DNA of 63,868 nt from Octopus sinensis (Eukaryota), in NCBI RefSeq assembly GCF_006345805.1, contig NW_021832256.1, positions 1-63,868 of the forward strand, written 5' to 3'. A program made the position numbers and the translations under genes. Below are positions 3,975-63,610 of this stretch, piece after piece. Below the pieces are notes generated by a model. The model was not told where the DNA came from, searched no databases, and was given only the letters and a program-made list of their open reading frames with translations. The first letter of the stretch is position 1. Every line of letters begins with the position of its first letter.

Positions 3975-4084
3975 TCGATGAATAGATAGATAGATCGATA
4001 GATAGATAGATCGATCGATCGATCGATAGATAGATATATAATAGATAGATAGACAATATAGAAGAGAGAGATAGATAGACAGAC

Positions 4085-4139
<55 letters not shown>

Positions 4140-4143
4140 AGAT
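3975..4143. repeat. (GATA)n microsatellite abutting the 3' end of Tx1 element A
   Basis: Direct inspection. Confidence 0.95.
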
Positions 4144-4521
4144 ATGTTTTTCTTTATTAGCCACACAGGGCTGCACACAGATAGAACAAATTACAAGGTA
4201 GAGCTTTTCTTTTGAAGGTTTAAAAAAAAAAAAAAAAAGGAAAGGGGGGATTCGATCAAAGGGATCGTAAAAGGAGAGAAAGAGGACAAAAAATGGGGGT
4301 TAAAAAAAGGGGGGAGAGAAAAAAAAATTGATCAATAGGGATCGTTATCACAGAAATGTCAATATGAAGTGTAAAGGGAGACAGGTGAGGTTTACCCGTG
4401 GAAAGAAAAGCCTACGGAAAGACCACGGTACCCTCGGTCAATGAAGTCACATTTATATTTCTTTTTTTTTTTTTTTTTTTTTTTTTGCAAATAAGCAAAT
4501 CTCTGTTTTCAATTTCTGGGT

Positions 4522-7500
4522 TCATAGGATTATGCTCAAGGTGGCTTCGTCATTCATACGTGCCATTCTTGCTACATTCACCCATCTTTTTTTAAAACAT
4601 TCGCTAGACAAAACTTGCCTCTCTACTCTCACTTTCCTTTTCAAGTGGTACTTGAAGAAGTTGATGAGAGATTGACCAGAGAGGAAAGTGTTTGTCTCCA
4701 ATCCTTTCAGACGCGTCCACCAGATACATTCTTTCGCCATAGCCACAAGGATGATGAAAATAGCTCTTCCTTCCCGTTTGAAGGAAGGAGGCGTGACAAT
4801 ATTGACGATAGACTCAGCTGATAAACCGACTCGTCCCACACGTGACAGCAGTTGTTCGACATAAGCCCACAGGTCGGAAATTGTTGGACACTGAACGAGT
4901 GCGTGCAGAACGGTTTCGTCGCTCTGACCGCATCTCGGGCAGGTCGGCCCCGTGTTTCTCGAGCCGTGTCTGTAGAGCTTATCCCGAACGGGTAGCGCTT
5001 CTCGGTAGCACTGCCAGGCCAGGGATCTCTGGAAGTTGTCCATGGGCCCTGGCCCGAAAGTCGTCCTGAACAGGCGGGTCAGGTACTCCTCGTCGACGTC
5101 CAGGTTCGCCCCGAGCTCGTCGTCGTACCTCCCCTCCACTAAACCCCTATAGAATGCTTTGGTTGTGTTGAAGTCACTTAAGGTCGACCCAGGACGGCAG
5201 AGTTGCTTGAGAGCAACGCGACACTCGCGGTGCCATTCGCCCTTCCTCGGCCTCTTTTTGATCCACGACTGCAGTTCGGTCATGGAGACGAGCTGCGGGA
5301 AAGCGTGCCTCACAAACGGCGACCACACCTGTTCACCGTCGTCTACATAGAGCCAGAGATGTCGCAGTCTCAGCGCGTGTCTGCGCATCATCAACCACGG
5401 CATGCCCAGCCCTCCTTTTAACGGGTGTTGACAGCAAATGGATCGCCTGACCATCGGGACGCATCCTTTCCACAAGAAGCGAAAGAGAATGCGTTGTAGT
5501 TTGGTGATGGTAGGGTCGGGACAAGGTACGACGGTCAGGCGGTAGTAGATGACGGACGCGATGTACGTGTTCGCCACCTCCGCTCGACCTTTTAGGGACA
5601 GTTTCCTCTCGGCCATTGCCGGGCGAGAGTGACCACCCTACTCGTTATCTCGTTCCAGTTCTTCTCCACTTGGAGGTCCGGACCAAACCAGACCCCGAGC
5701 AACTCAACCGGGCCGTCGGTCCAGCGTCCCACGACGGAGGCGCTGGTGGACGGCATGGGCTTGCTTCTCCAGGTGCCTAGTCGCAAGCCCACTGACTTTT
5801 CCCGGTTGATTTTCGCTCCTGTCACCGCTTCGTAGTTTTTCAGTGTCTCGCCGACCAGCTCGATGTGCTCGTGGCTAGACACTATGACGGTGACGTCGTC
5901 CGCGTATGCAGACACGCTCGTCCCGCATCCCAATTCTCGCGGGATGCCCCTTAGAGTCGCCAGCTTCCGCAGTAGTGGCTCAAGAGTCAATACGTATAGA
6001 AGCGCCGAGAGGGGGCATCCCTGACGGACCGAACGTGCAATGTCGAAAGGTCTCGATAGATGTCCATTTACGCGAATTACCGAACGGATGCCTCTGTACA
6101 AGGCAGCTATCCAGCCGCGGAAGACGGGACCGAAACCAGCCGCTCTCAGGACTGCCTCCAAGTATCGATGGTCTACCCTATCAAGGCTTTCGATTGATCC
6201 AAGTTGATCAGGGCCCCACCCATGCCAGGTTCGTTAACTACCCTGTCTATGATGTAGCGCATCAGATGGAGGTTGTCATGGATGGTCCGGCCTGGCACGG
6301 CGCACGTTTGCGCCTTGTCGACCAGTTTCTCGATGACAAGCGCCAACCTCTTGGCTAGCACCTTGGCCAAAATTTTCAAGTCTGCATTAAGCAGAGTGAT
6401 GGGCCTAAAGTTATCTATTACATTTCCTTGTTTAGATCTTTCTTCAGCAGTGTTACGGCTCCTCGGCTCACAAAACCAGGAATGCTCCCGTTTTGCTGCC
6501 AGTTGCAGTACACCGCCGCCAGAGATCTCCAAACAGTCTGGCATACAATTGTAAGCTCGTAGGTAGACCATCCAAACCCGGTGATTTGTCCCTCGAGCAT
6601 TCTGCCATCGCTTCCCGCACTTCCGCCGCCGTGATGGCACCTTCGCAGCACCCTGCCTTTCTTGTCGAGAGTCGTGGTAGGCTATGTAGGTAGGCACTGA
6701 AGTCCACCCTACGTTCTTGCCCTCCACTCGTTCCGAACAGTCGGGCAAAATGCTGCTGAAAGGCCTCACACATTTTACTTGGCTCGAGCAATTCGCGCCC
6801 CTGTTCATCTACCAGTGACCGAATGGTGGCTTTGTTGCCCTGTTGCGCCTCTGCCACCCGGGCCTCTCTCGCGGCTCCAACACCTTCGTTCCTTAGAGCA
6901 CGCATCCTAGCTCTGACAGCACATCCTTCGTGTTTGGCGTTGAAGTGTTGGTCGAGGGCCAACCTCGCCGCCAAAACGTCGGATGCGATGCCGCTTCTAA
7001 TTGCCTCTTCTAGCTTCTTAACTAGCTCACCCTCTACTCTATTTCTATCTATGGCTAGTGCTTTGCTGTACCTAATCGCTTCTGCTTTTACTGCTCTCTT
7101 GAGGGCAAACCACCATTTGTTGTTGATGATGGCTCCCGTCAAAGCCCTCTTTACTAGTGTGCTAATCCGGTCTCTGAAAACCTGTCTCGATGGGAAAGAC
7201 GCGTTTAGTTTCCAGTATCCGGGACCCTGCCTAAGTGTCTTACCTAAGTCTAGCGTACATGTCACAAGTTTGTGATCCGTGTAGCTGACTATGTGGAATT
7301 GTGGACATCCTATGCTATCTCTATCTACTGTCCTACACAGTATCCTATCTAGATACGATCTCGACGACCCGATGCGGTTGCTCCATGTCCACGTTGGCGC
7401 ATTCGGGTGGTCTAGTCGGAACCTGTCAGACAGTTGAAAGCGTCTGAGCAGGTCTCTGAGGCATTTGCATCCCCGTCTATTCCTATCTCTACCCACGTAG

Positions 7501-7952
7501 TCTACATGCGTGTCCAAGGTAGCATTCCAATCCCCCACTAAGAGTAAAGGACGAGACGTTCCCAAGAATACTTCTAGACGTTGAAAGAAATCCGCCCGAC
7601 CTGTTAAGGGCGGTGCGTAAACTGATACGAGTCGAAAAGCGCACCCATTGCTGCCGTCGACATCCAGGACGACCAGTCTACCCTCCGGGTCTACGAATAT
7701 TGTCCTTACTTTGAGATCCAGACTCTTGTGAAAAAGTACCGCGGTGCCACTACCGCCCATTCTCGGCAGACAGGGGGAAAAATAAATGTTGAACTGTCCG
7801 CCAAACATGGTCTTTAGGGCCCGCGGATTGTGGAGTCTGGTCTCACTTATGGCTATGATTTCTAACTTATGTGACTTTATGTCATTTAAGAGGTACCCTT
7901 GTTTCCAAGGGGACCCCAAGCCACGCGCATTTACACAACCAATCTTGATCAT
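4522..7952 (-). pseudogene. Element A ORF2: APE endonuclease + reverse transcriptase + zf-RVT-like motif, several frameshifts
   Basis: MIKIGCVNARGL, LLLVGDWNA, SYLDRI, SYTDHK (APE); FRPITLLNADLKILAK, VRQGCPLS, AYADD (RT); CPRCGQSDETVLHALVQC. Confidence 0.92.
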
Positions 7953-9966: not shown

Positions 9967-10394
9967 GGTGTTGTTGTCGGTGTTGGGGTGGACTTACTGA
10001 TGGTGTTGACGGTGCTTGGCCTTGCGACCTTTGTTTTGTATTTGTTGCTGTTGTCGATGTTGATGGTGGTGGAGGTGTGTTTGTTGTCACGTTCAGCGTA
10101 TGCTAACAGAGCATCCTGTTTTTCTGTCCTGCGTCACGCTTGACTTGCACCTCAGCCTCGTGGTGACCAGTGGCCATTTTGGAAATAAAATGGCTAAATG
10201 AAACCACGAAGGCTATGAGAATTTTTTCTTTTAAATTTTGCCCACAAGGCAAAATTTTGTGTAGATATTTATCAAAGGTTTGCAGTGGATGTGTTGCACA
10301 ACTTTTAACACAAAATATTTGTCAATATACACTTTTGAACGTATAAAATACCAACTTACGTGGAGCCCATTTGACTTGCGTCTGTCTGTCCAAG

Positions 10395-10488
10395 AGAGAT
10401 AGATAGATAGAGATAGATAGAATAATAGATGATAGATAGATAGTAGATAGATAGATAGATTATAGACAGATAGCAGACAGATAGATAG

Positions 10489-10519
<31 letters not shown>

Positions 10520-10893
10520 CAATAGAAGGATAGATAATAATAGATAGAATAGATAGATAAGATAGTGATAGACAGATAGCAGACAGATAGATAGATAGAT
10601 AATAGATAATAGATAGATAGATAGATAGATAGATGATAGATAGATTGAGATAGATAGATAGATAGATAGAATAGATAGATAGACAGATAGAGAGAGAGAG
10701 AGAGTATAGATAGATAGATAGATAGATAGATGATAGATATGATAGACAGACAGATGATAGATATATAGATAGAGAAGAGAGAAGAGGGAGATAATATAGA
10801 GAGGTATATACATTATATTATATATATATAGATAGATAGATAGATAGAAGAGAGAGGGAGATAAGAGGAGAGGTTATACATATATATATATAT

Positions 10894-10960
<67 letters not shown>
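10395..10960. repeat. Degenerate (GATA)n/(GA)n tract between the two Tx1 elements
   Basis: Direct inspection. Confidence 0.95.
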
Positions 10961-10961
<1 letters not shown>

Positions 10962-11256
10962 CGTTTTATTGTAGCCACACAGGGCTAAACACAGATTAAA
11001 AATGGACGAAATACAATGTAGAATTTTTTTCTTTTCAGGTGGGATGGGTGGGGCACAAAAAAAAAAACAACGTTTGATCAATAGGGATCTGTGGGGTTGT
11101 GTGGTGTATAAAAAGCAATATATATATATATATATAAGGTTCACAGTTTAGGTGTAGCCTTGGAAAGAAAAACCTACAAAAAAGACCAAGGTCACCTCAG
11201 ACAATTCGAAAAAGAACACATGAGCAAGTCGCCTTACTTCTCGTTGTCTCTTTTGG

Positions 11257-14200
11257 TTACAGATTTATGCTTAAAATAGTGTCGTCTTTCATACTGACCA
11301 TTTTTGCCACTTTTACCCACTTTTTATTAAAACATTCGTTCGACAAAGCCTTCCTCTCTATTCTCATCCTCCTTGAAAAAGTTGACACTTGGTACTTGAA
11401 AAAGTTGACAAGAGACTTACCAGAGAGTAAGGTGTTTGTTTGCAGTCCTTTCAAACGCGTCCACCACACACATTCTTTCGCCATAGCCATCAGCGTAACG
11501 AAAACCGTGTTCCCTTCCCGTTTAAAGGAAGGTGGTGGAACAATATTCACGATAGACTCGGCCGATAGGAGGGCCCGACCTACACGTGACAACAGCTGTT
11601 CGACGAAGGACCACAGCTCTGAAATATCTGGACACTGCACGAGTGCGTGCAGAACGGTTTCGTCGCTCTGACCGCATCTCGGGCAGGTCGGTCCGGTGAT
11701 GGTTTTCGAACCGTGCCTGTAGCTCTTCTCTCGAACAGGTATGCGTCTCGCCTCGATAGCATTGCAAGCCAGGGATTTCTGGAAGTTATCCATAGGCCCC
11801 GGCCCGAACGTCGTCCTGAACAGGCGGGTTAGGAATTCCTCGTCGACGCCCAGGTTTGCCCCGAGTGTGTCGTCGGACCTCCCCTCCACTAGTCCTCTAT
11901 AGAACGCTTTAGTCGTTTGTAAGTTGCACAAGTTTGACCCCGGTCGGCAGAGCTGCTGTAGAGCTTGGCGACACTCTCGGTGCCAATCGCCCAGTTTCGG
12001 TCTCTTCTTGATCCACGTTTGCAGTTCGGTCAGTGAGACGAGCTGCGGGAAAGCGCGCCTCACAAACGGTGCCCACACCTGTTCACCGTCGTCGATGAAG
12101 TTCCAGAGATCGCAGTCTCAGCGCATGCCTGCGCATCATCAACCACGGCATGCCCAGTCCTCCATTCAACGGATGTTGACAGCAAATAGACTTCCTCACC
12201 ATCGGAACGCGGAAGAGTATGCGTTCCAGTTTGGTGATGGTGGCGTCGGGACAAGGCACGACGGTCAGGCGGTAATCGATGACGGATGCGATGTACGCGT
12301 TCGCCACCTCCGCCCGGCCTTTTAGAGACAGCTTTCTCTCGGCCCATGTTTGGCTGAGAGCGACCATTCTACTCGTGATCTCGTCCCAGTTCTTATCCAT
12401 TTGGAGGTCCGGACTGAACCAGACCCCGAGCAATTTAACCGATCCGTCCGTCCAGCGTCCCACTACTGAGCCACAGTCGGACGGCATGGGCTTGCTTCTC
12501 CAGGTGCCAAGTAGCAAACCCACTGACTTTTCCGGGTTAATCTTCGCTCCCGTCACCGTTTCGTATTTTCTTAGTGTCTCGCCTATCATCTGGATGTGTT
12601 TGTCGCTCGACTCTATGACGGTGACATCGTCCGCATATGCCGACACGCTCGTCCCGCAACCCAGTTCCCGTGGGATGCCCCTCAGTGTTGCCAGCTTCCG
12701 TAGTAGCGGCTCGAGAGTCAATACATACAGAAGCGCCGACAGGGGACACCCCTGACGGACCGAACGCGTGATGTCAAACGGTTTCGATAAGTGGCCATTC
12801 ACCCGAATCACCGATCGAATGCCGCTATACAAGGCAGCGATCCAACCGCAGAAGACGGGACCGAAGCCAGCCGCCCTGAGGACGGCCGCCAAGTACCGAT
12901 GGTCGACCCTATCGAAGGCTTTAGACTGATCCAAATTTATCAGCGCCCCACCCATGCCAGGATCCTTAACTACCCTGTCCACAATGTAGCACATCAGATG
13001 GAGGGTGTCATGTATGTTTCTGCCCGGCACAGCGCATGCTGCATGTCCTGTCGACCATTTACCAACCATGACAAGTGCCAACCTCTCGGCTATTACTTTG
13101 GCCAAAATTTTCAAATTTGCGTTGAGCAGAGTGATGGACCTGAAATCTATAAAATTCCCCTTGTTTGGGTCTTTCTTCAGCAACGTCACTGCACCTCGGC
13201 TCACGAAACCGGGGATTCTCCCGTTTTGTTGCCAGTTGCAGTAGACTGATGCCAAGAGGTCGCCAAACAAGCCTGGCATTTGACAATACAGCTCGTAGGG
13301 TAAACCATCCAATCCAGGCGACTTATCCCTCGCGCATCCCGCCATCGCATCCCGCACGTCAGCGGCTGTGATGGGACTTTCACAACACTCCGCTTCTCTT
13401 GCCGAGAGCCGCAACAAGTCGGTCAGGTAGGCACTGAAATCCATCCCGCGTTCCGACCCACCACTCGCACCAAACAGTCGAGCAAAGTGCTGTTGAAAGG
13501 CCTCACACATCCTTTCAGGTTCGAGTAAACTGCATCCCTGTTGATCTATTAGAGACCGAATGGTGGCTCTGTTGCCACGCTGCGCCTCCGCTACCCTGGC
13601 CTCTCGCGCAGCTTCGATCCCTTCGTTCCTTAAGGCACGCATTTTAGCTCTGACGACGCAACCTTCGTGCTTGGCGTTGGGTGTTGGTCGAGGGCCATCC
13701 TCGCAGCGCACGTTGGTTGCGCTGCCATTGGTATGCCTCTTCTAGTTTCTTAACTAGGTCTCTCTCTACTCTATTTCGATCTATCGCTAATTCCTTGCTA
13801 ACCTAATTGATTCCGATTTTATTGCCATTTTCAGGGCGGTACCACCAGCGGTTGTTAACGACGGCTCCCGTCAGCGCCTCTTGATTAACTCGCTAATCCG
13901 GTTCCTGTAAACCTGTCGCGCTAAGAGCGACGTGTTCAGTTTCCAGTAACCGGGACCCTGTCTATGTGTCTTATCTAAGTCGAGCGTACACGTCACAAAT
14001 TTGTGATCTGTGTAGCTGACTATTTTAAATTGTGGACATCCTACACTATCCTTATCCGCTGTCCTGCATAGAATTCTATCTAGATAAGATCTCGACGATC
14101 CGACGCGGTTTGTCCAAGTCCACGTTGGCACGTTCAGATGGTCGAGTCAGAACCTGTCAGACAAATGGAAACGTCTGAGTAGGTCTTTGAGGCACTTACA

Positions 14201-16835: not shown

Positions 16836-16871
<36 letters not shown>

Positions 16872-16876
16872 GAGAC

Positions 16877-16936
<60 letters not shown>

Positions 16937-16948
16937 GGATAGATAGGC

Positions 16949-17011
<63 letters not shown>

Positions 17012-17026
17012 ATAGATGGATGGATG

Positions 17027-17107
<81 letters not shown>
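16836..17107. repeat. (GACA)n(GATA)n microsatellite at the 5' end of element B
   Basis: Direct inspection. Confidence 0.95.
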
Positions 17108-17109
17108 GC

Positions 17110-17560
17110 GGACCGCAACTCGTCCATGAACCAACTAGAAGCAACCAAATTGCTTTGGATCTAGTGGTAAGCAATCATGCTAACACTATCCATGACATAA
17201 CAGTGGAGAGAACCCTCTTGGCCGATCGTGACAAAGTACTCTGTAACCTCAATCTTCAGCATCTAAAAATTTGGCATAAATCACAAACTCCAGTGCGCCC
17301 ATTTGATAATATGAATTTACACAGGTGAAACTGGAGTGCGATCACACAAGACTTATCTCAAGTGGGCTGGTCCTTCACCGTTGCTTCCTCCAGTACCACA
17401 ACTAACACAAACGCATGACAACTATTTGAGGACACAATCACCCACCCATGCTCAAAACACGCATCCTCACGACTCGTAAGGAACAGTAGATGCAGGATTG
17501 CAAAACAGAAAAGCACTCATCAGGAGGATAAAAACAATAAACCGAAAAATCAAAACTCTA
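17110..17560 (+). mobile_element. CR1/L2-like LINE fragment (APE C-terminus and linker)
   Basis: Translates to [21 protein letters not shown]...LADRDKVLCNL, resembling the APE PTR...LDL...SDH motifs. Confidence 0.6.
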
Positions 17561-17567
17561 AAAGACC

Positions 17568-18353
17568 TATTTCTTTACTACCCACAAGGGGCTAAACACA
17601 GAGAGGACAAACAAGGACAGACACACGGACTAAGTCGATTATATCGACCCCAGTGCGTAACTGGTACTTATTTAATCGACCCCGAAAGGATGAAAGGTGA
17701 AGTCGACCTCGGCGGAATTTGAACTCAGAACGTAACAGCAGACGAAATACCTATTTCTTACTACTCACAAGGGCTAACACAGAGAGGACAAACAAGGACA
17801 GACAAACGGATTAAGTCAATTACATCGACCCCAGTGCGTAACTGGTACTTATTTAATCGACCCCGAAAGGATGAAAGGCAAAGTTGACCTCGGCGGAATT
17901 TGAACTCAGAACGTAAAAACAGAAATACCTATTTCTTTACTACCCACAAGGGGTTAAACACAGAGAGGACAAACAAGGACAGACAAACGGATTAAGTCAA
18001 TTACATCGACCCCAGTGCGAAACTGGTACTTATTTAAACGACCCCGAAAGGATGAAAGGCAAAGTTGACCTCGGCGGAATTTGAACTCAGAACGTAAAAA
18101 CAGAAATACCTATTTCTTTACTACCCACAAGGGGCTAAACACAGAGAGGACAAACAAGGACAGACAAACGGATTAAGTCAATTACATTGATCCCAGTGCG
18201 TAACTGGTACTTAATTTATCGACCCCGAAAGGATGAAAGGCAAATTCGACCTGGGCGGAATTTGAACTCAGAACGTAGCGGCAGAGGAAATACTGGTAAG
18301 CATTTCGCCCGGCCTGCTAACGTTTCTGCCAGTTTGCCACCTAAATACCACAA
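17568..18353 (-). mobile_element. SINE family M (tRNA head + central domain + Tx1-like tail): one headed copy plus three tandem 3' units
   Basis: Unit boundaries at 17568, 17752, 17930 and 18111; single head at ~18290-18353; core GCCTTTCATCCTTTCGGGGTCGAT resembles the Meta/Sauria-type domain as I recall it (unverified). Confidence 0.85.
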
Positions 18354-23770: not shown

Positions 23771-24583
23771 TGCGGATTCCATGCACAGCGAGGCTCACCA
23801 ATGGAGAAGTTCTTAAGCAGATCAGGCCGAAAATGTCGCTAGAAGCTGGGATCACCAAGCATAGATTGGCTATATTTCGGTCATATTATGCGGAGAGAAT
23901 CCCTGGAGAAGGACATCATGCTCGGAATGGTCAGTGGCAAGAGAGGAAGAGGCCGACCAATGGAGAGGTTCTTAAGCAGATCAGGCCGAAAATGTCGCTA
24001 GAAGCTGGGATCACCAAGCATAGATTGGCATATTTCGGTCATATTATGTGGAGAGAATCCCTGGAAAAGGACATCATGCTCGGAATGGTCAGTGGCAAGA
24101 GAGGAAGAGGCCGACCAATGGAGAGGTTCTTAAGCAGATCAGGCCGAAAATGTCGCTAGAAGCTGGGATCACCAAGCAAAAAAGATTGGCATTATTTCGG
24201 TCATATTATGCGGAGAGAATCCCTGGATAAGGACATCATGCTCGGAATGGTCAGTGGCAAGAGAGGAAGAGGCCGACCAATGGAGAGGTCTTAAGCAGAT
24301 CAGGCCGAAAATGTCGCTAGAAGCTGGGATCACCAAGCGTAGTTAGATTGGCATATTTCGGTCATATTATGTGGAGAGAATCCCTGGAGAAGGACATCAT
24401 GCTCGGAATGGTCAGTGGCAAGGTAGTGGCCAGAGGGAGAGGCCGACAAAGAACCCACTGGCTTGACACCATCAGGAGTGATACCGGAATGGACATGGCC
24501 AATCTGAAGGAAGCGGCCCAGGATAGAACTGATTGGAGGACACTGATCCAACGAGTAACCGAGAGTCGACTTCGACTGAGCGG

Positions 24584-26629: not shown

Positions 26630-27290
26630 CTTCGTGGCACTCCGTCGGTTACGACGACGAGCGCCCCAGCCGATCCAATCAACAGAACAGCCTGCTACAC
26701 GTGAAATTAACGTGCAAGTGGCTGAGCACTCCACAGACACGTGTAACATAGTTCCCAGGAAGATTCAGCGTGACCAAGGCTGGCCCCTTTGAAAGAAAGG
26801 TACAACAGAGACGGGAAGAAAGAGTGAGAGAAAGTTGTGGTGATAGAGTATAGAAGGGTTCGCCCCACCCCGTCAGAGCCTCGTGGCACTTTTAGGTGTT
26901 TTTGTTCGGTAAACACTCACGACGCCCTGTCTGGGAATCGAAACCGTGATCCTACGATAGCCGATCCAATCAACAGAACAGCCTGCTACACGTGAAATTA
27001 ACGTGCAAGTGGCTGAGCACTCCACAGACACGTGTAACATAGTTCCCAGGGAGATTCAGCGTGACCAAGGCTGGCCCCTTTGAAGGAAAGGTACAACAGA
27101 AACGGGAAGAAAGAGTGAGAGAAAGTTGTGGTGACAGAGTATAGAAGGGTTCGCCCCACCCCGTCAGAGCCTCGTGGCACTTTTAGGTGTTTTTGTTCTG
27201 TAAACACTCACGACGCCCTGTCTGGGAATCGAAACCGTGATCCTACGATCGCAAGTCCGCTGCCCTAACCACTGGGCCATTGTGTCTTCA
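26630..27290 (-). mobile_element. Tandem pair of chimeric SINEs (family D-like middle + family B tail)
   Basis: ~295-bp direct duplication; single tRNA head at ~27215-27290; middle AAGAAAGAGTGAGAGAAAGTTGTGG shared with family D. Confidence 0.7.
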
Positions 27291-27299
27291 CACACACAC

Positions 27300-27680
27300 A
27301 CACATCATCATCATCATCATCATCATCGTTTAGCGTCCGTTTTCCATGCTAGCATGGGTTGGACGGTTCTACTGGGGTCTGTGAAGCCAGAAGGCTTCAT
27401 CAGGCCCAGTCAAATCTGGCAGTGTTTCTACGGCTGGATGCCCTTCCTAACGCCAACCCACTCCGTGATGAGTGTAGTGGATGCTTTTACGTGCCACCCG
27501 CACAGGTGCCAGACAGAGCTGGCAAACGGCCACAAACGGATGGTGCTTTTACGTGTCACCGGCACGGGGCCAGGCGAGGCTGGCAACGGACACGAACGGA
27601 TGGTGCTTTTACGTGCCACCAACACGGGGGCCAGACAGAGCTGGCAAACGTCCACGAAACGGATGGTGCTTTTACGTGTC
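27300..27680 (-). mobile_element. 5'-truncated 3' UTR of the RTE-like LINE (family C) with multiple hairpin modules
   Basis: (CAT)n tail; homology to 39705-40150. Confidence 0.75.
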
Positions 27681-27785
27681 TACATCGTTTGTAGAAATGC
27701 ATTAATCTGGAGGAGCACACTGTAAGATGCACAGCAGTTAATATTGTAGTGGGGTCAGGGTTTAGGGTTAGGGGGCACAAACGTT

Positions 27786-28975
27786 AGCACACCGGACGAA
27801 ATGCTTTGTGGTATTTCGTCCGCCGCTGCGTTCTGAGTTCAAATTCCGCTGAGGTCGACTTTACCTTTCATCCTTTCAGGGTCGATAAATTAAGTACCTA
27901 TTTCTTTGTTACCCACAAGGGGCTAAACACAGAGGGCACAAACAGGGACAGACATAGGTATTAAGTCGATTACATCGACCCCAGTGCGTAACTGGTACTT
28001 ATTTAATCGACCCCGAAAGGATGAAAGGTAAAGTCGACCCCGGCGGAACTTGAACTCAGAACGTAGCGGCGGACGAAATACCTATTTCTCTACTACCCAC
28101 AAGGGGCTAAACACTGAGAGGACAAACAAGGACAGACAAACAGATTAAGTTGATTATATCGACCCCAGTGCGTAACTGGTACTTATTTAATCGACCCCGA
28201 AAGGATGAAAGGTAAAGTCGACCCCGGCGGAACTTGAACTCAGAACGTAGCGGCGGACGAAATACCTATTTCTCTACTACCCACAAGGGGCTAAACACTG
28301 AGAGGACAAACAAGGACAGACAAACAGATTAAGTTGATTATATCGACCCCAGTGCGTAACTGGTACTTATTTAATCGACCCCGAAAGGATGAAAGGTAAA
28401 GTCGACCCCGGCGGAACTTGAACTCAGAACGTAGCGGCGGACGAAATACCTATTCTCTACTACCACAAGGGGCTAAACACTGAGAGGACAAACAAGGACA
28501 GACAAACAGATTAAGTTGATTATATCGATCCCAGTGCGTAACTGGTACTTATTTAATCGACCCCGAAAGATGAAAGGTAAAGTCGACCCCGGCGGAATTT
28601 GAACTCAGAACGTAGCGGCGGACGAAATACCTATTTCTCTACTACCCACAAGGGGCTAAACACTGAGAGGACAAACAAGGACAGACAAACAGATTAAGTT
28701 GATTATATCGACCCCAGTGCGTAACTGGTACTTATTTAATCGACCCCGAAAGGATGAAAGGCAAAGTGAACCTCGGCGGAATTTGAACTCAGAACATAGC
28801 GGCAGACGAAATACCGCTGAGCATTTCGCCCGGCGTGCTAACGTTTCTGCCAGCTCGCCGCCTTAGATAAATTAAGTACCAGTTATGCACTGGGGTCGAT
28901 GTAATCCACCTAATCCGTTTGTCTGTACTTGTTTGTCCCCTCTATGTTTAGCCCCTTGTGGGCAATAAAGAAATA
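27786..28975 (+). mobile_element. SINE family M copy interrupted by an antisense five-unit family M concatemer
   Basis: Host halves 27786-27898 and 28866-28975; GATAAATTAAGTACC duplicated at 27884-27898 and 28866-28880. Confidence 0.85.
27899..28865 (-). mobile_element. SINE family M concatemer (one head + five bodies) with 15-bp TSD
   Basis: Unit boundaries at 27899, 28083, 28267, 28451 and 28632; single head ending at 28865. Confidence 0.88.
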
Positions 28976-29024
28976 AATATTGTAGTGGGGTAGACCGGTA
29001 TGTGTGTGTGTGTGTGTGGTGTGG

Positions 29025-30355: not shown

Positions 30356-30546
30356 AGTGCCTAATATATTGGGCGCCTGCGCTGAACCGAAGTAAACAAA
30401 CCAACGCTGGCTGTGAAGTGGTGGGGGTGGGGGACAATGTCTTTGGTCAGCGACACTCGTTCAAAGTGTCACCAAACCCATAACCATGTGTTTCGTAGAA
30501 AACTTATTACTACACACGCATCAGCCGCGCCTGTATGTATACCTTG

Positions 30547-31522
30547 CTGTGGCTGTGTGGTAAGTAGCTTGCTTACCAACCACATGGTTCCGGGTTCAGT
30601 CCCACTGTGTGTCACCTTGGGCAAGTGTCTTCTACTATAGCCTACCTTGTGAGTGGATTTGGTAGACGGAAACTGAAAAGAAGCCTATCGTATATATGTA
30701 TATACATATATGTGTAGGAGTGGCTGTGTGGTAAGTAGCTTGCTTACCAACCACATGGTTCCGGGTTCAGTCCCACTGCGTGGCACCTTGGGCAAGTGTC
30801 TTCTGCTATAGCCCCGGGCCGACCAATGCCTTGTCAGTAGATTTAGTAGACGGAAACTGAAAAGAAGCCTGTCGTATATATGTATATACATATATGTGTA
30901 GGAGTGGCTGTGTGGTAAGTAGCTTGCTTACCAACCACATGGTTCCGGGTTCAGTCCCACTGCGTGGAACCTTGGGCAAGTGTCTTCTGCTATAGCCTAC
31001 CTTGTGAGTGGATTTGGTAGACGGAAACTGAAAAGAAGCCTATCGTATATATATATACGACAAAAGGAAAAGATCCTTATTTACATTTCTGAAGAAAAAA
31101 AGGATACCCTACCCCCACCCCTAACCCTAACCCTAAAATAGATTGGCTGTGTGGTAAGTAGCTTGCTAATCAACCACATGGTTCCGGGTTCAGTCCCACT
31201 GTGTGGCACCTTGGGCAAGTGTCTTCTGCTATAGCCTCGGGCCGACCAATGCCTTGTGAGTGGATTTGGTAAATGGAAACTGAAAGAAGCCCGTCGTATA
31301 TATGTATATATATATATGTGTGTGTGTATGTGTTTGTCCCCCTAGCATTGCTTGACAACCGATGCTGGTGTGTTTACGTCCCCGTTACTTAGCGGTTCGG
31401 CAAAAGAGACCGATAGAATAAGTACTGGGCTTACAAAAGAATAAGTCCCGGGGTCGATTTGCTCGATTAAAGGCGGTGCTCCAGCATGGCCGCAGTCAAA
31501 TGACTGAAACAAGTAAAAGAGT
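30547..31522 (+). mobile_element. SINE family A array: three 5' halves, a foldback fragment, then a complete copy
   Basis: Heads at ~30547, 30717, 30900 and 31145. Confidence 0.8.
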
Positions 31523-39490: not shown

Positions 39491-39704
39491 AATTGTTTCA
39501 AATTTTGGTTCAAGGCCAACAATTTTGAGGGGAGGGGCAAGGGAATTGCATCAGTCCCATTGTTCAGCCTATTTCCTATTTTATCAGCAATGAAAAAGGA
39601 GTACCGGCAGAGTTGACCTCAGTGGAATTTGAACTCAGAACAGAGAACCAGAAGAAATTCCACAAGGCGTTTTTTGTCTGATCTGCTAATGATTGTGCAA
39701 ACTC

Positions 39705-42700
39705 ATCATCATGATTGTTTAACGTCCGCTTTCCATGCTAGCATGGGTTGGACGGTTCAACTGGGGTCTGGGAAGCCTGAAGGCTGCACCAGACCAGTCA
39801 GATCTGGCAGTGTTTCTACAGCTGGATGCCCTTCCTAACGCCAACCACTCCGTGAGTGTGGTGGGTGCTTTTTATGTGCCACCGACACAGGTGCCAGACG
39901 AGGCTGGCAACGGCCACGCTCGGATGGTGTTTTTTATGTGCCACCGACACAGGGCCCAAACGAGGCTGGCAAACGGCCACGCTCGGATGGTGCTTTTAAC
40001 GTGCCACCGGCACGGAGGCCAGGCGAGGCTGGCACGGCCACGATCGGATGGTGTTTGTTACATGCCCACAGCACGGAGGCCAGTCGATGTGGTACTGGCT
40101 ACGGCCACGTTCAGATGGTTTTCTTATGTGCCACCGGCACTGGTATCACAAAAATACAAATTCCATTGATGTTCATCGATTTTGATTTGGTTTGATTTTC
40201 ACTTGCCTCAACAGGTCTTCACAAGTGTCCCAAGAAGGAAGGTATACACAGGTCTTCTCGCGCGCAGCATACTTCCAAAGGTCTCAGTCTCTGGTCATTT
40301 CCTCGGTGAGACCTAAAGCGCGAAGGTTGTTCTTCACCACCTCGTCCCAGGTTTTCCTGGGTCTACCTCTTCCACAGGTTCCCTCAACCGCTAGGGTGTG
40401 GCACTTTTTCACACAACTATCTTCATCCATTCTTACTACGTGTCCATACCAGCGTAGACGCCTCTCTTGCACACCACATCTGATGCTTCTTAGGTCCAAC
40501 TTTTCTCTCAAGGCACTTACACTCTGTCGGGTATGAACACTGACATTACACATCCAACGGAGCATACTGGCTTCATTTCTTGCGAGCTTACGCATATCCT
40601 CAGCAGTCATGGCCCATGTTTCACAGCCATGTAGCATGGCTGTTCGCACACATGCGTCATACAGTCTGCCTTTTATTCTGAGTGAAAGGCCTTTTGTCAC
40701 CAGCAGAGGTAAGAGCTCTCTGAACTTTGCCCAGGCTATTCTTACTCTAGCAGTTACACTTTCGGCACACCCACCCCTGCTACTGACTTGGTCACCTAGG
40801 TAACGGAAACTATCAACTATTTCAAGTTTTTCTCCCTGTAATGTGGCGGAAGATGGTCTCTGCACATCTTCAGTCTTTATTGAACCAGAGCATCTGCCAC
40901 ATACAGAAACTATCTTCCTAGTTAGCCTTCCTTTGACATTGCTGCACCTCTTATGTGTCCATAGCTTACACTTGGTGCATCTTATAGAGTTCCTACCTAT
41001 GCCTTTTCTACAGATCGAGCAGGGCCATCTACCTGAAGGTGTTTGAGATTTGTCTACCTTCCTACTTATTACGACTTTGGTTTTAGCTAGATTGACTCTA
41101 AGGCCCTTCGATTCTAATCCTTGCTTCCACGCCTGAAACTTCACCTCAAGTTCTGATAGTGATTCAGCAATTAGAGCAAGGTCGTCAGCATAGAGGAGCT
41201 CCCAGGGGCATCCTGTCTTGAATTCCTCCGTTATTGCCTGGAGGACTATGATAAATAGGAGGGGGCTGAGGACTGAGCCTTGGTGGACCCCAACCTCCAC
41301 CCAGAATTCTTCACTGTACTCATTGCCAACCCTCACCTTACTAACAGCGTCCCTGTACATGGTATGCACAGCTCTCACTAACCATTCATCTACCCCTAGT
41401 TTCCTCATTGACCACCAGATGAGGGATTGGGGGACCCTGTCAAAGGCTTTCTCCAAGTCAACGAAAGCCAGGTACAGAGTTTTATCTTTGGCTAGGTATT
41501 TCTCCTGCAGCTTTCTCACCAGAAATATGGCATCAGTGGTGCTTTTCCCTGGCACGAAACCAAACTGCATCTCGTCTAGGTTGACTCTCTCTCTAATCAA
41601 TTGGGCTATGACCCTTTCCGTAACCTTCATTACCTGATCCAACAGCTTAATACCTCTGTAATTACTTGTATCTAGGGCGTCACCTTTACCTTGTAGCAGT
41701 TGACTATTATGCTGCTACACCAGTCATTGGTATGACTCCTTCGTGTATCACCTGGTTAATAATATACGGGTGACTAGGCTATAACCAACACTGCCAGATT
41801 ATTTTGAGCATCTCCGCAGTAATTCCTGACGGGCCTGGGGCTTTCCCTGTCTTCATGCTTCCAATTGCCTTAACTACCGTGGAACTGTCAACTCGGATAG
41901 CTGGTCCCTCTATTGGGTCGACATTCGGCAGACTCTCTTTATCCCATTCATTCTCTTTGTTGAGCAACCTTTCATAGTGGCATCTCCAAACCTCTCTCTT
42001 TGCATCCTCATTTTTTCTTATCTGCTTCCCCTCTAGCTAAATACACCTGTCTCCTAGCTTCTCTTTTCGCAGTCTGATACAATTCCCTACTACCGCCTTT
42101 CCTCCAGTCCTTCCAAGCCTCTCTCTTGTCTCTAATAGCCCTGTCTACAACATTGTTCCACCACCACGTTACCCTGGGACGAGATGGGACTTTGCTCCAT
42201 CCACAGATCTGGTCAGTAGCTCTCAGCAGATTGTCCCGTAGAAACCTCCAGTTGGCTTCCACATTATGTGATGCTATATCCCCTTCTATTTTGTCGAAAG
42301 CTTCGAGTAGAACTTCTCTAAATCTCCGTCCATTTACAGGATCTTTAAGTTTCCAGACTCTTCTCCTCCGAGCTGGTCTTCTTCTGGGCAGCCATTTGGC
42401 CCTGATCCTGAAGACGCTAACTACTAATCTATGTTGAGGAGTACATTCCTCGCCTGGGAAGGTTTTGGCATTTATAAGCAGCCCTCTTTCCCTCTTTCTG
42501 GCAAGGATGTAGTCGATCTGGCTAGTGTGTCTGCCAGAACGGTAAGTGACTAGGTGAGAGGTGGGTTTCCTGAAGTTGGTATTGCAGACCATAAGGTCAT
42601 TTGCATCGCAGAACTCCAGCAGCCTGGTTCCCTTCTCATTGCGAGAACCAAAACCGTAGCCCCTGTGTATGCCATAGAAGCCCCCGACATGCCGTCCAAC

Positions 42701-46982: not shown

Positions 46983-47296
46983 GAATATTACCATCCTCTC
47001 TTGCGATTTTTGAATATTACCATCCTCTCTTGCGATTTTTGAATATTACCATCCTCTCTTGCGATTTTTGAATATTACCATCCTCTCTTGCGATTTTTGA
47101 ATATTACCATCCTCTCTTGCGATTTTTGAATATTACCATCCTCTCTTGCGATTTTTGAATATTACCATCCTCTCTTGCGATTTTTGAATATTACCATCCT
47201 CTCTTGCGATTTTTGAATATTACATCCTCTCTTGCGATTTTTGAATATTACCATCCTCTCTTGCGATTTTTGAATATTACCATCCTCTCTTGCGAT
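46983..47296. repeat. 29-bp tandem repeat, about 11 near-identical copies
   Basis: GAATATTACCATCCTCTCTTGCGATTTTT; no spacers. Confidence 0.95.
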
Positions 47297-47678: not shown

Positions 47679-48191
47679 AATCCACCGTTCTTCACTTCCA
47701 TCCCCATTGACCCTTCTAAGATTTCACCATCTTCTACTTCTCAGGTCCAAACGACGCTCTAAGAATCCACCGTTCTTCACTTCCATCCCCATTGACCCTT
47801 CTAAGATTTCACCATCTTCTTCTACTTCTCAGGTCCAAACGACACTCTAAGAATCCACCGTTCTTCACTTCCATCCCCATTGACCCTTCTAAGATTTCAC
47901 CATCTTCTACTTCTCAGGTCCAAACGACACTCTAAGAATCCACCGTTCTTCACTTCCATCCCCATTGACCCTTCTAAGATTTCACCATCTTCTACTTCTC
48001 AGGTCCAAACGACACTCTAAGAATCCACCGTTCTTCACTTCCATCCCCATTGACCCTTCTAAGATTTCACCATCTTCTACTTCTCAGGTCCAAACGACAC
48101 TCTAAGAATCCACCGTTCTTCACTTCCATCCCCATTGACCCTTCTAAGATTTCACCATCTTCTACTTCTCAGGTCCAAACGACACTCTAAG
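47679..48191 (+). repeat. 85-bp tandem repeat x6 spanning the intron 3' end, acceptor and first 19 nt of the RYBP exon
   Basis: Units start at 47679, 47764 (88 bp), 47852, 47937, 48022 and 48107. Confidence 0.95.
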
Positions 48192-49925: not shown

Positions 49926-50154
49926 ATTTCTTTACTACCCACAAGGGGCTAAACACAGAGGGGGACAAACAAGGACAGACAAACAGATTAAGTTGATTAC
50001 ATCAACCCCAGTGCGTAACTGGTACTTAATTTATCGACCCCGAAAGGATGAAAGGCAAAGTCGACCTCGGCGGAATTTGAACCCAGAACGTAACGGCAGA
50101 CGAAATATGGCTACGCATTTCGCCCGGCGTGCTAACGTTTCAGCCAGCTCGCCT

Positions 50155-52200: not shown

Positions 52201-52618
52201 AAGGCAGCGAGCTGGCAGAAACATTAGCACGCCAGGCGAAATGCTTGGCGGTATTTCGTCTGCCGCTACGTTCTGAGCTCAAATTCCGCCAAGGTCGACT
52301 TTGCCTTTCATCCTTTCAGGGCCGATAAATTAAGTACCAGTTATGCACTGGGGTCGATGTAATCGACTTAATCCATTTGTCTGTCCTTGTTTGTCCTCTC
52401 TGTGTTTAGCCCCTTGTGGGTAATAAAGAAATTGGTATTTCGTCTGCCGCTACGCTCTGAGTTCAAATTCCGCCGAGGTCGACTTTGCCTTTCATCCTTT
52501 CAGGGTCGATAAATTAAGTACCAGTTACGCACTGGGGTTGATGTAATCAACTTAATCCATGTGTCTGTCCGTGTTTGTCCCCTCTATGTTTAGCCCCCTG
52601 TGGGCAATAAAGAAATAA
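52201..52618 (+). mobile_element. SINE family M dimer (head + two bodies)
   Basis: GTATTTCGTC at 52251 and again at 52435. Confidence 0.85.
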
Positions 52619-54899: not shown

Positions 54900-55098
54900 T
54901 CAACTTTTTGCACAAGGCCAATAATTTTGGAGGAGGGGGATGAGTCAAATACAGTGCTCAACTGGTACTTATTTTATTGACCCCGAAAGGATGAAAGGCA
55001 AAGTTGACCTTGGTGGAATTTGAACTTGGAATGTAAAGACAAAATGCCGCTAAGCATTTTGCCTGGGGTGCTAACAATTCTGCCAGCTTGCTGCCTTA
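54900..55098 (-). mobile_element. Family M head and core with an alternative (non-Tx1) tail
   Basis: Same head and core, but tail CCCCTCCTCCAAAATTATTGGCCTTGTGC; related tails near 469-550 and 39495-39550. Confidence 0.6.
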
Positions 55099-55569: not shown

Positions 55570-56443
55570 CATGCCTGACTCATTAGGGCTGGTTTCTTGG
55601 CGTATAGGTTCCCCACCTGGACGGGACGCCGGTCCGTCGCAGGTGAGCTGCAAGATGCAGGAGGAAAGAGTGAGAGAAAGTTGTGGCAAAAGAGTCAGCA
55701 GAAATTTCGCCATTACCTTCTGCTGGAGTCGCGTGGAGCTTAGGTGTTTCGCTCATAAGCACACACATCGTCCGGTCTGAGATTCAAACCGGCGATCCCT
55801 CAACCGCATGTCCACTGTTGTTTCTTTGTTCTTTCTCAAGCCATGCCTGACTCATAAGGACTGGTTTCCCGGTTTCTTGGTGTATAGGTTCCCCACCTGG
55901 ATGGGACACCGGTCCGTTGCAGGTGAGCTACAAGATGCAGGAGGAAAGAGTGAGAGAAAGTTGTGGCAAAAGAGTCAGCAGAATTTTTGCCATTACCTTC
56001 TGCCGGAGCCGCGTGGAGCTTAGGTGTTTCGCTCATAAGCACACACATCGCCCGGTCTGAGATTTGAACCCGCGATCCCTCGACTGCTGCTCTAACCACT
56101 AGGCCATGTGCCTCCACTATGTGTATGTGTGTATGTTTCTTGTTTGTTCCTTCTTGAGCTATGCCTGGCTCATAAGGGCCGGTTTCCCGGTTTCTTGGCG
56201 TATAGGTTCCCCACCTGGACGGGACGCCAGTTCATCGCAGGTGAGCTGCAAGATGCAGGAGGAAAGAGTGAGAGAAAGTTGTGGCAAAAGAGTCAGCAGA
56301 AATTTCGCCATTACCTTCTGCTGGAGTCGCGTGGAGCTTAGGTGTTTCGCTCATAAGCACACACATCGTCCGGTCTGAGATTCGAACCCGCGATCCCTCG
56401 ACCGCGAGTCCGCTGCTCTAACCACTAGGCCATGTGCCTCCAC
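55570..56443 (-). mobile_element. Three tandem copies of tRNA-headed SINE family D
   Basis: Head GTGGAGGCACATGGCCTAGTGGTTAGAGCAGCGGACTCGCGGTCGAGGGATCGCGGGTTCGAATC; ~290-bp period. Confidence 0.8.
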
Positions 56444-63229: not shown

Positions 63230-63610
63230 AGTGCCACGTAAGCGAACCATCCGAACGTGGCTGTTGCTAGCGCCGACCCCGACGTGTCTCTGTGCCAGTG
63301 GCACGTAAAAAGCACCATCCGATCGTGACCGTTGCCATCCTCTCCTGGCCCCCGTGCCGGTGGCACGAAAAAAGCACCATCCGATCATGGCCATTTGCCA
63401 CCCCAGTCTGGCACCTGTGTCAGTGGCATGTAAAATGCACCCACTACACTCACGGAGTGGTTGGCATTAGGAAGGGCATCCAGCTGTAGAAACATTGCCA
63501 GATCAGATTGGGCCTGGTGCAGCCTTCTGGCTTCCCAGACCCCAGTTGAACCGTCCAACCCATGCTAGCATGGAAAGCGGATGCTAAATGATTATGATGA
63601 TGATGATGAT
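63230..63610 (+). mobile_element. Family C copy with several hairpin modules
   Basis: GTGCCGGTGGCACG-AAAAAGCACC modules and (GAT)n tail. Confidence 0.75.

What the first reader, a model, noticed from the sequence alone, without database searches (positions are those of the whole stretch)
17568..18353. SINE M forms fixed-register concatemers at three independent loci
Seen: arrays at 17568-18353 (4 bodies), 27899-28865 (5) and 52201-52618 (2) each have one complete head, and each extra ~180-bp unit restarts at the same GTATTTC site about 50 nt into the SINE. The junction GAAATA-GG-TATTTC is a perfect inverted repeat, so the RNA 3' end can pair with the restart site. The unit also begins with GT and ends with AG. 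Random slippage would not reuse one breakpoint. Inference: programmed RT template jumping during insertion, or rolling-circle copying of a circular SINE RNA.
Basis: partly seen in the sequence, partly recalled or inferred. Interest (0 to 1): 0.8.

Follow-up and report, generated by a model that had tools for sequence, protein, structure and literature searches.

The report
SINE body arrays grown by recombination
A short retrotransposon (SINE) in an octopod genome forms one-head, many-body tandem arrays with one fixed junction, but the extra copies arose by ordinary unequal recombination from two-body founders, not by repeated reverse-transcriptase restarts or rolling-circle copying.

Summary
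Three loci carry one SINE head followed by 4, 5 and 2 bodies of about 184 bp, and every junction joins the SINE 3' end (…GAAATA) to the same site (G50, GGTATTTC).

The proposed mechanism for array growth is not supported. In both long arrays, every interior unit has its 5' part from the last unit and its 3' part from the first. That is the product expected from unequal crossing-over of a founder dimer. Two A1 units also share a derived 3-bp deletion plus a TTTTT run.

Only the founder dimer junction, shared by three loci, still needs a site-specific cause.
- **Hairpin:** G50 is the first base of the 3' arm of a conserved 12-13 bp head hairpin.
- **Target motif:** GGTATTT matches the element's own insertion sites. 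The target-site duplications (TSDs) start GGTATTT at A1 and GGTACTT at A2.
- **RNA pairing:** in the full-length RNA the 3' end does not pair with the restart site.
- **GT…AG:** this is a phase artefact.

My best reading is that a second SINE copy joined at G50, either by nested same-orientation insertion or by a reverse-transcriptase (RT) switch between two RNAs, and recombination then expanded the dimer. Similar SINE arrays are already described in bivalves and squamates. A genome-wide census was not possible with these tools.

The parts
17568..18340 (-). Array A1: head 18294-18340; bodies u1 18110-18293, u2 17929-18109, u3 17751-17928, u4 17568-17750.
   Evidence: u2 and u3 are u4(5')/u1(3') hybrids. 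They share a 3-bp deletion plus TTTTT at 17912-17928 and 18093-18109.
18341..18349 (-). A1 5' target-site duplication, GGTATTTAG.
   Evidence: The pre-insertion sequence is supported by alignment to the K-type SINE into which A1 inserted.
17558..17567 (-). A1 3' target-site duplication, GGTCTTTTAG (a diverged copy).
27899..28865 (-). Array A2: head 28815-28865; bodies u1 28631-28814, u2 28450-28630, u3 28266-28449, u4 28082-28265, u5 27899-28081.
   Evidence: u2-u4 carry u5 states at unit positions 11-53 and u1 states at positions 109-177. u3 and u4 are identical.
28866..28880 (-). A2 5' target-site duplication, GGTACTTAATTTATC (15/15 identical to the 3' copy).
27884..27898 (-). A2 3' target-site duplication, GGTACTTAATTTATC.
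52201..52617 (+). Array A3: head 52201-52250; bodies u1 52251-52434 and u2 52435-52617. Junction is GAAATTG|GTATTTC.
   Evidence: No target-site duplication was found.
27776..27898 (+). Monomer M2, 5' part (5'-truncated head plus body up to GATAAATTAAGTACC). It is interrupted by A2.
28881..28975 (+). Monomer M2, 3' part, ending …GAAATA. M2's own target-site duplication AATATTGTAGTGGGGT lies at 27740-27755 and 28976-28991.
49926..50152 (-). Monomer M1 (head plus one body), inserted in a (TA)n tract.
54952..55097 (-). Partial, diverged SINE M-like copy P1 (SINE positions 7-156). It carries a compensatory G-C to A-U change in the head hairpin.
4145..4190 (-). 3' end of a degenerate LINE (ORFs on the minus strand from 4522 up to 9966; Pfam matches for endonuclease, RT and zf-RVT lie within 4522-7952). 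Its last ~42 nt match the SINE M tail. It is followed by (TATC)n.
   Evidence: 83% over 42 nt, E=5e-7.
10961..10996 (-). 3' end of a second related LINE (RT and zf-RVT ORFs at 11257-13711) with the same tail motif, also followed by (TATC)n.

Best explanation
**What SINE M is.** It is a non-autonomous retrotransposon with four parts:
- a tRNA-promoter-like head of about 50 nt;
- a body of about 184 nt that contains the B-box-like motif and a core conserved across phyla;
- a roughly 40-nt tail shared with an endonuclease/RT/zf-RVT LINE;
- no poly(A).

**Shown.** Each array occupies a single insertion site. The arrays grew from two bodies to four or five by unequal homologous recombination between the first and last bodies of a founder dimer.

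**Inferred.** The founder dimer arose in a retrotransposition-coupled step that joined the 3' end of one SINE M copy (…GAAATA) to G50 of another. G50 is special in two ways. It is the first base of the 3' arm of the conserved head hairpin, and GGTATTT matches the family's own integration target. There are two versions of this step:
- A new copy inserted in the same orientation at the internal GGTATTT of a resident copy. Its 5' end was resolved by homology with the resident copy, which leaves no second head and no visible duplication.
- During one insertion the RT switched at the hairpin apex from one SINE RNA to the 3' end of a second one.

The palindrome at the junction is then a by-product of the 3' end meeting the target motif. 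It is not a pairing signal.
For: **Growth by recombination.**
- Interior units are last-unit(5')/first-unit(3') hybrids with one switch point, in the orientation expected from an unequal crossover. In A2 this holds at 20 of 20 informative sites, with one exception in u2. In A1 it holds at 12 of 14 scorable sites; the other two are private changes in u4.
- A derived 3-bp deletion plus TTTTT is shared by A1 u2 and u3.
- A derived G at unit position 33 is shared by A2 u3-u5 but not u2. This suggests stepwise growth.

**One insertion site per array.** A perfect 15-bp target-site duplication flanks all of A2, and a 9/10-bp duplication flanks A1.

**G50 is special.**
- Nucleotides 50-61 pair with 34-45; 51-61 at probability >0.98 and the loop-closing G50-U45 pair at 0.83. 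The hairpin alone is -15.7 kcal/mol.
- The hairpin is kept in 7 copies, with a compensatory G-C to A-U change at one stem pair (in P1).
- The target-site duplications begin GGTATTT (A1) and GGTACTT (A2), against the internal GGTATTT.
- Eleven of the 21 GGTATTT sites in the window are SINE M restart sites.
- A2 itself landed inside another SINE M copy.

**Founder units probably differed from the start.** They differ by 15-20 of about 184 positions, as much as copies at different loci. The differences include non-CpG sites that are polymorphic in the family.

**Partner LINE.** Its tail is shared with SINE M.

**Precedent.** The same array architecture has been reported in bivalves (PMC11481361) and squamates (PMC10702118).
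Against: - Only three arrays and about three monomers were available, and no genome-wide census was possible.
- A3 has no detectable target-site duplication, and its flank is not GGTA-like.
- The subfamily markers are mosaic, so the four-gamete test fails between them. 'Different source RNAs' is therefore suggestive only.
- Two non-CpG sites (unit positions 53 and 148) partly sort first units from last units. A single dimeric master would also predict this.
- No by-products of nested insertion, such as a second head at G50, were seen in the window.
- The two sub-versions (nested insertion versus RT switch) cannot be told apart here.
Confidence: 0.55

Rival explanations
1. One ancestral dimeric (or multimeric) master: a two-body SINE M arose once, became a Pol III source gene and spread as a unit, as Alu-type dimers do. 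The three loci then share the junction by descent, and local unequal crossing-over changed the body number.
For: - The junction is identical at three loci.
- The consensus unit has no TTTT run, so Pol III could read through several bodies.
- The derived T at unit position 148 is in the first units of all three arrays. The derived A at position 53 is in the last units of A1 and A2.
- Recombination-driven growth is shown.
Against: - Each position-specific marker has an exception (A1 u4 for position 148, A3 u2 for position 53). Monomer M2 also carries A53.
- The alpha/beta marker (GATAAATTAAG versus GATTAAATAAG) gives alpha-beta, beta-beta and alpha-alpha in the three arrays.
- Last units differ from one another at tail sites that are polymorphic in the family.
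- This model does not explain why the junction sits at the hairpin apex and matches the target motif.
Confidence: 0.25
2. DNA-level origin only. Because insertions favour GGTAYTT sites, the 3' target-site duplication forms a short direct repeat with the internal GGTATTT exactly one body apart. Replication slippage or unequal exchange between these repeats duplicates the body.
For: - The A1 flank GGTATTTAG matches the internal GGTATTTCG at 8 of 9 positions. The A2 flank is GGTACTT.
- Monomers M1, M2 and L121 lack such flanks.
- The window is full of other recent tandem duplications of 85-320 bp in arbitrary registers.
Against: - The A3 flank has no such repeat.
- The repeats are only 4-7 bp.
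- Founder units would be identical at birth. In fact they differ at non-CpG sites polymorphic in the family, including the two-base alpha/beta change within A1.
Confidence: 0.1
3. Whole arrays are made in one insertion, either by programmed serial RT jumps from position ~50 back to the RNA 3' end, guided by GAAAUA/UAUUUC pairing, or by rolling-circle reverse transcription of a circular one-unit RNA (GT…AG unit).
For: - The junction is fixed and palindromic.
- A head-less unit RNA is predicted to pair its two ends.
Against: - Interior units are first/last hybrids.
- Derived mutations are nested within arrays, including a TTTTT run that would stop Pol III.
- Founder units differ by 8-11%.
- Tail-to-restart pairing has probability 0 in the full-length RNA.
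- The junction G belongs to the restart side, so the unit is not GT…AG.
- The same palindrome was present at A1's outer 3' junction with its target (GAAATA|GGTATTTAG).
Confidence: 0.05

Closest known systems
TSD1-(SINE)n-TSD1 tandem arrays of conserved-domain tRNA-derived SINEs in the blood clam Scapharca broughtonii (PMC11481361, read)
   Same: - The first unit has a complete tRNA-related head.
- Interior units are truncated at one common head position.
- The last unit has a complete tail.
- One target-site duplication pair flanks the whole array.
- The host is a mollusc, and the SINE carries a conserved central domain.
- The authors suggest unequal recombination.
   Different: - In the clam, interior units are also 3'-truncated. 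Here each unit runs to the true SINE 3' terminus.
- Here the same junction recurs at three loci. It coincides with a hairpin apex and a target-like motif.
- Here the recombinant nature of the interior units is shown directly.
SINE-derived satellites (sSats) of squamate reptiles (PMC10702118, read)
   Same: - Tandem repeats are made from part of a SINE, with a longer terminal unit that reaches the SINE terminus.
- They have many independent origins.
- Homogenisation increases with array length.
- Unequal homologous recombination is proposed.
   Different: - Squamate arrays reach up to 1000 units and are subtelomeric. Here the arrays have 2-5 units and are dispersed.
- The repeat registers vary between squamate taxa.
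- No link to a target motif or hairpin was reported.
Tandem full-length SINE multimers and dimeric SINEs (Dip/B1/B2 tandems, PMC8466645; Alu-type dimers, from general knowledge)
   Same: - Units are arranged head to tail.
- The same open question applies: did one SINE integrate into another, or did a dimeric template retrotranspose?
   Different: - Those multimers consist of whole elements joined through A-rich tails. Here only the body is repeated under a single head.
- The window also holds whole-element tandems of other SINE families (30645-30997 and 55825-56443).
RT template switching and jumping by non-LTR retrotransposon RTs (R2 end-to-end jumps in vitro; U6-L1 chimeric retrocopies; from general knowledge, not tested here)
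   Same: It would join the 3' end of a second RNA to an internal or 5' position of the first RNA within one insertion event, under one target-site duplication pair.
   Different: Known jumps occur mainly at template 5' ends and join unrelated RNAs. No evidence here separates this route from nested insertion.
PcH-sat satellite of limpets, derived from a Nin-SINE (PMC11121367)
   Same: A mollusc SINE segment has become a tandem repeat.
   Different: PcH-sat is a pericentromeric high-copy satellite that lacks the Pol III boxes. Here the arrays are short, keep the head and are flanked by target-site duplications.

Membership tests
SINE (Pol III-type head, LINE-derived tail) | Internal A and B promoter boxes, or tRNA-like origin of the head. 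| tested here: inconclusive
   An A-box-like TGGCAGA and a B-box-like GAGTTCAAATTCC (GTTCGAATTCC in L121) can be read in the sequence. ARAGORN finds no tRNA. Rfam gives no tRNA match at E<=1 over M1 and A3.
SINE (Pol III-type head, LINE-derived tail) | Target-site duplications flanking short non-coding copies. | tested here: met
   A2 15/15 bp, M2 16/16 bp, A1 9/10 bp. None was found for A3.
SINE (Pol III-type head, LINE-derived tail) | 3' tail shared with a partner LINE. | tested here: met
   The tail matches the 3' end of the LINE at 4149-4190 over 42 nt at 83%. The same motif is present at 10972-10996. The LINE ORFs carry endonuclease, RT and zf-RVT domains.
SINE tandem array of the TSD1-(SINE)n-TSD1 type (PMC11481361) | A single target-site duplication pair around the whole array; a full head only on the first unit; interior units cut at one common head position. 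| tested here: met
SINE tandem array of the TSD1-(SINE)n-TSD1 type (PMC11481361) | Interior units are also truncated in the 3' tail. | tested here: not met
   Interior units end at …GAAATA. This is the same terminus as in monomers and in the last units next to the target-site duplication.
Array growth by unequal homologous recombination | Interior units are chimeras of the flanking units, with the polarity last(5')/first(3'). | tested here: met
   (A2: 20 sites; A1: 14 scorable sites, 12 consistent, the other two private to u4).
Array growth by unequal homologous recombination | Copy-number polymorphism at orthologous or allelic loci. | not testable with these tools
   No second assembly or haplotype of this genome could be reached.
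Rolling-circle or circular-RNA-templated concatemer | All units are copies of one template, so they are identical at birth with star-like divergence. | tested here: not met
   First and last units differ by 15-20 of about 184 positions. Interior units are hybrids, and shared derived mutations are nested.
Rolling-circle or circular-RNA-templated concatemer | A circular RNA carrying the junction exists. | not testable with these tools
   No RNA data were available. Folding shows the ends pair only if the head is absent.
Dimeric master SINE (Alu-like) | Position-specific diagnostic differences between unit 1 and unit 2 that are shared by all copies. | tested here: inconclusive
   Two sites partly sort by position, and others do not. 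Only three arrays were available.
Conserved-central-domain SINE superfamily (Deu/Nin/Meta type) | A central core shared with SINEs of distant animal hosts. | tested here: met
   The exact core pattern was found on 120 metagenome contigs. BLAST recovered SINE M positions ~98-142 at 82-97% identity on 91 of them. Their heads and tails are unrelated to SINE M. Which named domain this is was not tested.

The most novel reading that the evidence does not exclude
SINE M carries a copy of its own integration target (GGTATTT), placed exactly at the start of the 3' arm of its head hairpin. New cDNAs are therefore repeatedly captured at G50 of another SINE M, which may be a resident DNA copy or a second RNA at the hairpin apex. 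This would be a built-in, self-targeting way of making one-head, two-body dimers, which then seed minisatellites by recombination. Because TATTT can act as a Pol III stop, dimers may also be better source genes.
Probability: 0.3. Interest if true: 0.6.

Novelty: new member of a known kind. Interest (0 to 1): 0.35.

Why it matters
How dispersed SINEs turn into tandem repeats is an open question in satellite-DNA origin. These three loci show the growth phase directly, because the recombinant interior units record unequal crossing-over. That narrows the unexplained step to a single junction. If that junction is made by self-targeted retrotransposition or a hairpin-apex RT switch, it would give a concrete and testable route from SINE to minisatellite in SINE-rich cephalopod genomes. 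If instead it comes from one dimeric master, the case is ordinary.

Tried and rejected
**Attempts at a genome-wide junction census, all unsuccessful.**
- A metagenome scan with the conserved core returned 120 contigs. They share only the ~45-nt core of an unrelated SINE, and each carries a single copy.
- A protein search with the antisense ORF that crosses the junction gave one hit. It is a monomer on a 543-bp contig.
- Scans of bacterial and archaeal genomes and of viral contigs with the tail pattern gave nothing.
- Contigs fetched through LINE RT homologues did not help. ENA locus L122 has no SINE M. Argonauta hians locus L123 has only a ~73% related SINE. L124 is too short.

**Other negative or inconclusive results.**
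- ARAGORN and Rfam did not recognise the head as a tRNA.
- A search for a target-site duplication around A3 found none.
- Founder-unit distances and informative sites could not separate a single dimeric master from recurrent dimer formation.

**Ideas considered and rejected.**
- Microhomology between the head GAAAT and the tail GAAAT as the source of the junction. The predicted junction …GAAAT|GCTTAGCG… is not seen.
- Intron or back-splice reading of GT…AG. This is a phase artefact.
- Integration of a rolling-circle concatemer into a resident monomer. A1 u4 lacks the deletion carried by u2 and u3, so this does not fit.

Full report
**Context**

The window is AT-rich, repeat-dense eukaryotic DNA. 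A LINE reverse-transcriptase ORF at 12083-13711(-) has its best named relatives in Argonauta hians (64% identity) and the cuttlefish Acanthosepion pharaonis (44%). The source is therefore a cephalopod, most likely an octopod.

**The observation**

TRF reports arrays at 17561-18277 (period 181, 4 copies), 27895-28815 (period 184, 5 copies) and 52250-52616 (period 184, 2 copies). Reading both strands and BLASTing one monomer against the window gives these copies:

| Copy | Coordinates | Content |
|---|---|---|
| A1 | 17568-18340 (-) | head + 4 bodies |
| A2 | 27899-28865 (-) | head + 5 bodies |
| A3 | 52201-52617 (+) | head + 2 bodies |
| M1 | 49926-50152 (-) | monomer |
| M2 | 27776-27898 + 28881-28975 (+) | monomer, split by A2 |
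| P1 | 54952-55097 (-) | diverged 5' fragment |

- Every extra body starts at GTATTTC, about 50 nt into the element.
- GAAATAGGTATTTC occurs six times in the window, always at a junction. The other two junctions are point variants.

**Anatomy of SINE M**

- *3' end.* The element ends …AAAGAAATA with no poly(A).
- *Target-site duplications (TSDs).* A2 is flanked by a perfect 15-bp duplication (GGTACTTAATTTATC), M2 by a perfect 16-bp duplication, and A1 by GGTATTTAG / GGTCTTTTAG. No duplication was found for A3.
- *Partner LINE.* The last ~40 nt match the 3' ends of two degenerate LINEs on the minus strand, at 4145-4190 and 10961-10996. Their ORFs carry endonuclease, RT and zf-RVT domains, and both are followed by long (TATC)n tracts.
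- *Conserved core.* The central ~45 nt (…GCCTTTCATCCTTTCGGGGTCGATAAAT…) occur on 120 metagenome contigs inside an otherwise unrelated SINE. This is a conserved central domain shared across phyla. I did not test which named domain it is.
- *Head.* ARAGORN and Rfam do not call the head a tRNA. A- and B-box-like motifs are visible. The B-box-like motif lies inside the repeated body.

**How the arrays grew**

I aligned all units. At each site where the first and last unit of an array differ, I asked which of the two each interior unit matches.

- *A2.* u2-u4 carry the last-unit state at unit positions 11-53 and the first-unit state at positions 109-177. This holds at 20 of 20 sites, with one exception in u2.
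- *A1.* u2 and u3 are last-like at positions 14-106, apart from two changes private to u4, and first-like at positions 109-127.
- *Polarity.* Last(5')/first(3') is exactly the middle unit produced when two head-F-L chromatids misalign by one unit and cross over.
- *Nested derived changes.* A1 u2 and u3 share a 3-bp deletion plus a TTTTT run, built on substitutions also present in u4. A2 u3-u5 share a derived G that u2 lacks. A2 u3 and u4 are identical.

Growth from two bodies to four or five was therefore stepwise, homologous and most simply at the DNA level. It did not come from serial RT restarts or rolling-circle copying. A single-event RT copy-choice between the two units of a dimer RNA cannot be formally excluded for A2. 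It does not fit the nested mutations in A1.

**The junction itself**

- *The G belongs to the restart side.* Where the SINE 3' end abuts flanking DNA (M1, M2, end of A3, and a monomer on contig L121), GAAATA is followed by T or A. Most heads read GCG|GTATTTC. The GT…AG unit is a phase artefact.
- *The restart sits in a hairpin.* In the folded full-length RNA, nt 50-61 (GGUAUUUCGUCU) pair with head nt 34-45; probability is >0.98 for nt 51-61 and 0.83 for the loop-closing G50-U45 pair. The hairpin has 12-13 bp, a UAGC loop and an energy of -15.7 kcal/mol on its own.
- *No tail-to-restart pairing.* Its probability is 0, and forcing it costs about 13 kcal/mol. Only a head-less unit RNA pairs its two ends.
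- *The hairpin is conserved.* It is kept in seven copies, with a compensatory G-C to A-U change at one stem pair (in P1). The restart is precisely the first base of the 3' arm.
- *The restart looks like an insertion target.* GGTATTT resembles the element's own insertion sites. The duplications begin GGTATTT (A1) and GGTACTT (A2). Other copies have AATATT, AATATA or (TA)n. Eleven of the 21 GGTATTT sites in the window are SINE M restart sites.
- *The palindrome is not special to junctions.* A1's outer 3' junction originally read GAAATA|GGTATTTAG. The palindrome is simply the 3' end placed next to the target motif.
- *SINE M lands in SINE M.* A2 inserted into M2 at an antisense GGTACTT that every unit carries.

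**Origin of the founder dimers (inferred)**

First and last units of an array differ by 15-20 of about 184 positions. That is as much as copies at different loci differ. The differences include non-CpG sites that are polymorphic in the family:
- GATAAATTAAG versus GATTAAATAAG within A1;
- tail variants within A2 and A3.

This suggests the two bodies came from different source RNAs. The markers are mosaic, however, and the sample is tiny. I rank the origins as follows.

| Origin of the founder dimer | Probability |
|---|---|
| Retrotransposition-coupled joining at G50: nested same-orientation insertion into a resident copy with homology-resolved 5' end, or an RT switch at the hairpin apex between two RNAs | ~0.55 together |
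| One dimeric master spread by descent | ~0.25 |
| Slippage between the internal GGTATTT and a GGTA-type flank | ~0.10 |

**Background in the same window**

Other repeats also form recent tandem duplications in various registers:
- a 291-bp internal duplication in another SINE, starting about 40 nt into its head (26668-27249);
- whole-element SINE tandems (30645-30997 and 55825-56443);
- a 158-bp x4 array (23790-24422).

An Argonauta locus holds a whole-element dimer of a related SINE, with a flank-like sequence repeated before, between and after the copies. Tandemisation of SINEs is thus common here.

**Comparison with the literature**

- The architecture matches the TSD1-(SINE)n-TSD1 arrays of a bivalve (PMC11481361).
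- It also resembles the SINE-derived satellites of squamates (PMC10702118). Both are attributed to unequal recombination.
- Two things differ here. Each unit reaches the true 3' terminus, and one junction recurs at three loci at a hairpin apex that looks like a target site.

**Verdict**

This is a real feature and a cephalopod example of a known kind. Array growth is explained by unequal recombination. The founder junction remains an open but testable point.

Noticed in passing
window 27756-27775: The 5' end of monomer M2 is truncated. It is joined to its target-site duplication through filler CAGG plus GTTTAGGGTTAGGGGG, which resembles the telomeric repeat (TTAGGG).
   Followed up: no
window 3982-4144 and 10393-10960: Both LINE copies that share the SINE M tail are followed directly by long (TATC)n/(AGAT)n microsatellites. 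This could be a repeat tail or insertion specific to that microsatellite. Another (TAGA)n tract lies at 16836-17107.
   Followed up: partly
window 26668-27249: A different SINE family has a 291-bp internal tandem duplication (98% identical) that restarts about 40 nt into its tRNA-like head. One full head lies at 27250-27291 (minus-strand sense) and the tail continues after the second unit.
   Followed up: partly
window 55825-56443 and 30460-31070: Whole-element head-to-tail tandems of two other SINE families are present. The 30645-30997 pair even shares the same irregular TA-rich tail, which points to DNA-level duplication.
   Followed up: partly
window 23790-24422: A 158-bp unit is repeated four times (95% matches) in a sequence that looks like it may be coding. 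Its identity was not established.
   Followed up: no
window 27482-27678, 39864-40140, 63290-63441: A module of about 62 bp (…GTGCCACCAGCACAGGGGCCAGAC…) is repeated 2.4-4.4 times at three loci. Two of them lie near heads 70-75% similar to the SINE M head (39577-39704 and 63623-63745). This looks like another SINE family with an internal variable-number repeat.
   Followed up: no
L001-L120 (metagenome contigs): The ~45-nt SINE M core recurs in a high-copy SINE of another, unidentified animal host found in host-associated metagenomes. That SINE has a different head and tail.
   Followed up: partly
L123 14827-15323 (Argonauta hians): A related SINE (conserved core plus tail, ~73% to SINE M) forms a full-length tandem dimer at 77% identity. 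A flank-like sequence (AGRYCAGCAC) is repeated before, between and after the two copies.
   Followed up: partly
window 47679-48191 and 46983-47296: Very homogeneous minisatellites are present: 85 bp x6 at 98% matches and 29 bp x10.9 at 99%. Their origin is unknown.
   Followed up: no
window 52324-52338, 52508-52522, 27884-27898, 28866-28880: The 15-mer used as A2's target (GGTACTTAATTTATC, antisense to the SINE) is present unchanged in both A3 units. Every alpha-type SINE M body therefore carries this second potential landing site.
   Followed up: partly
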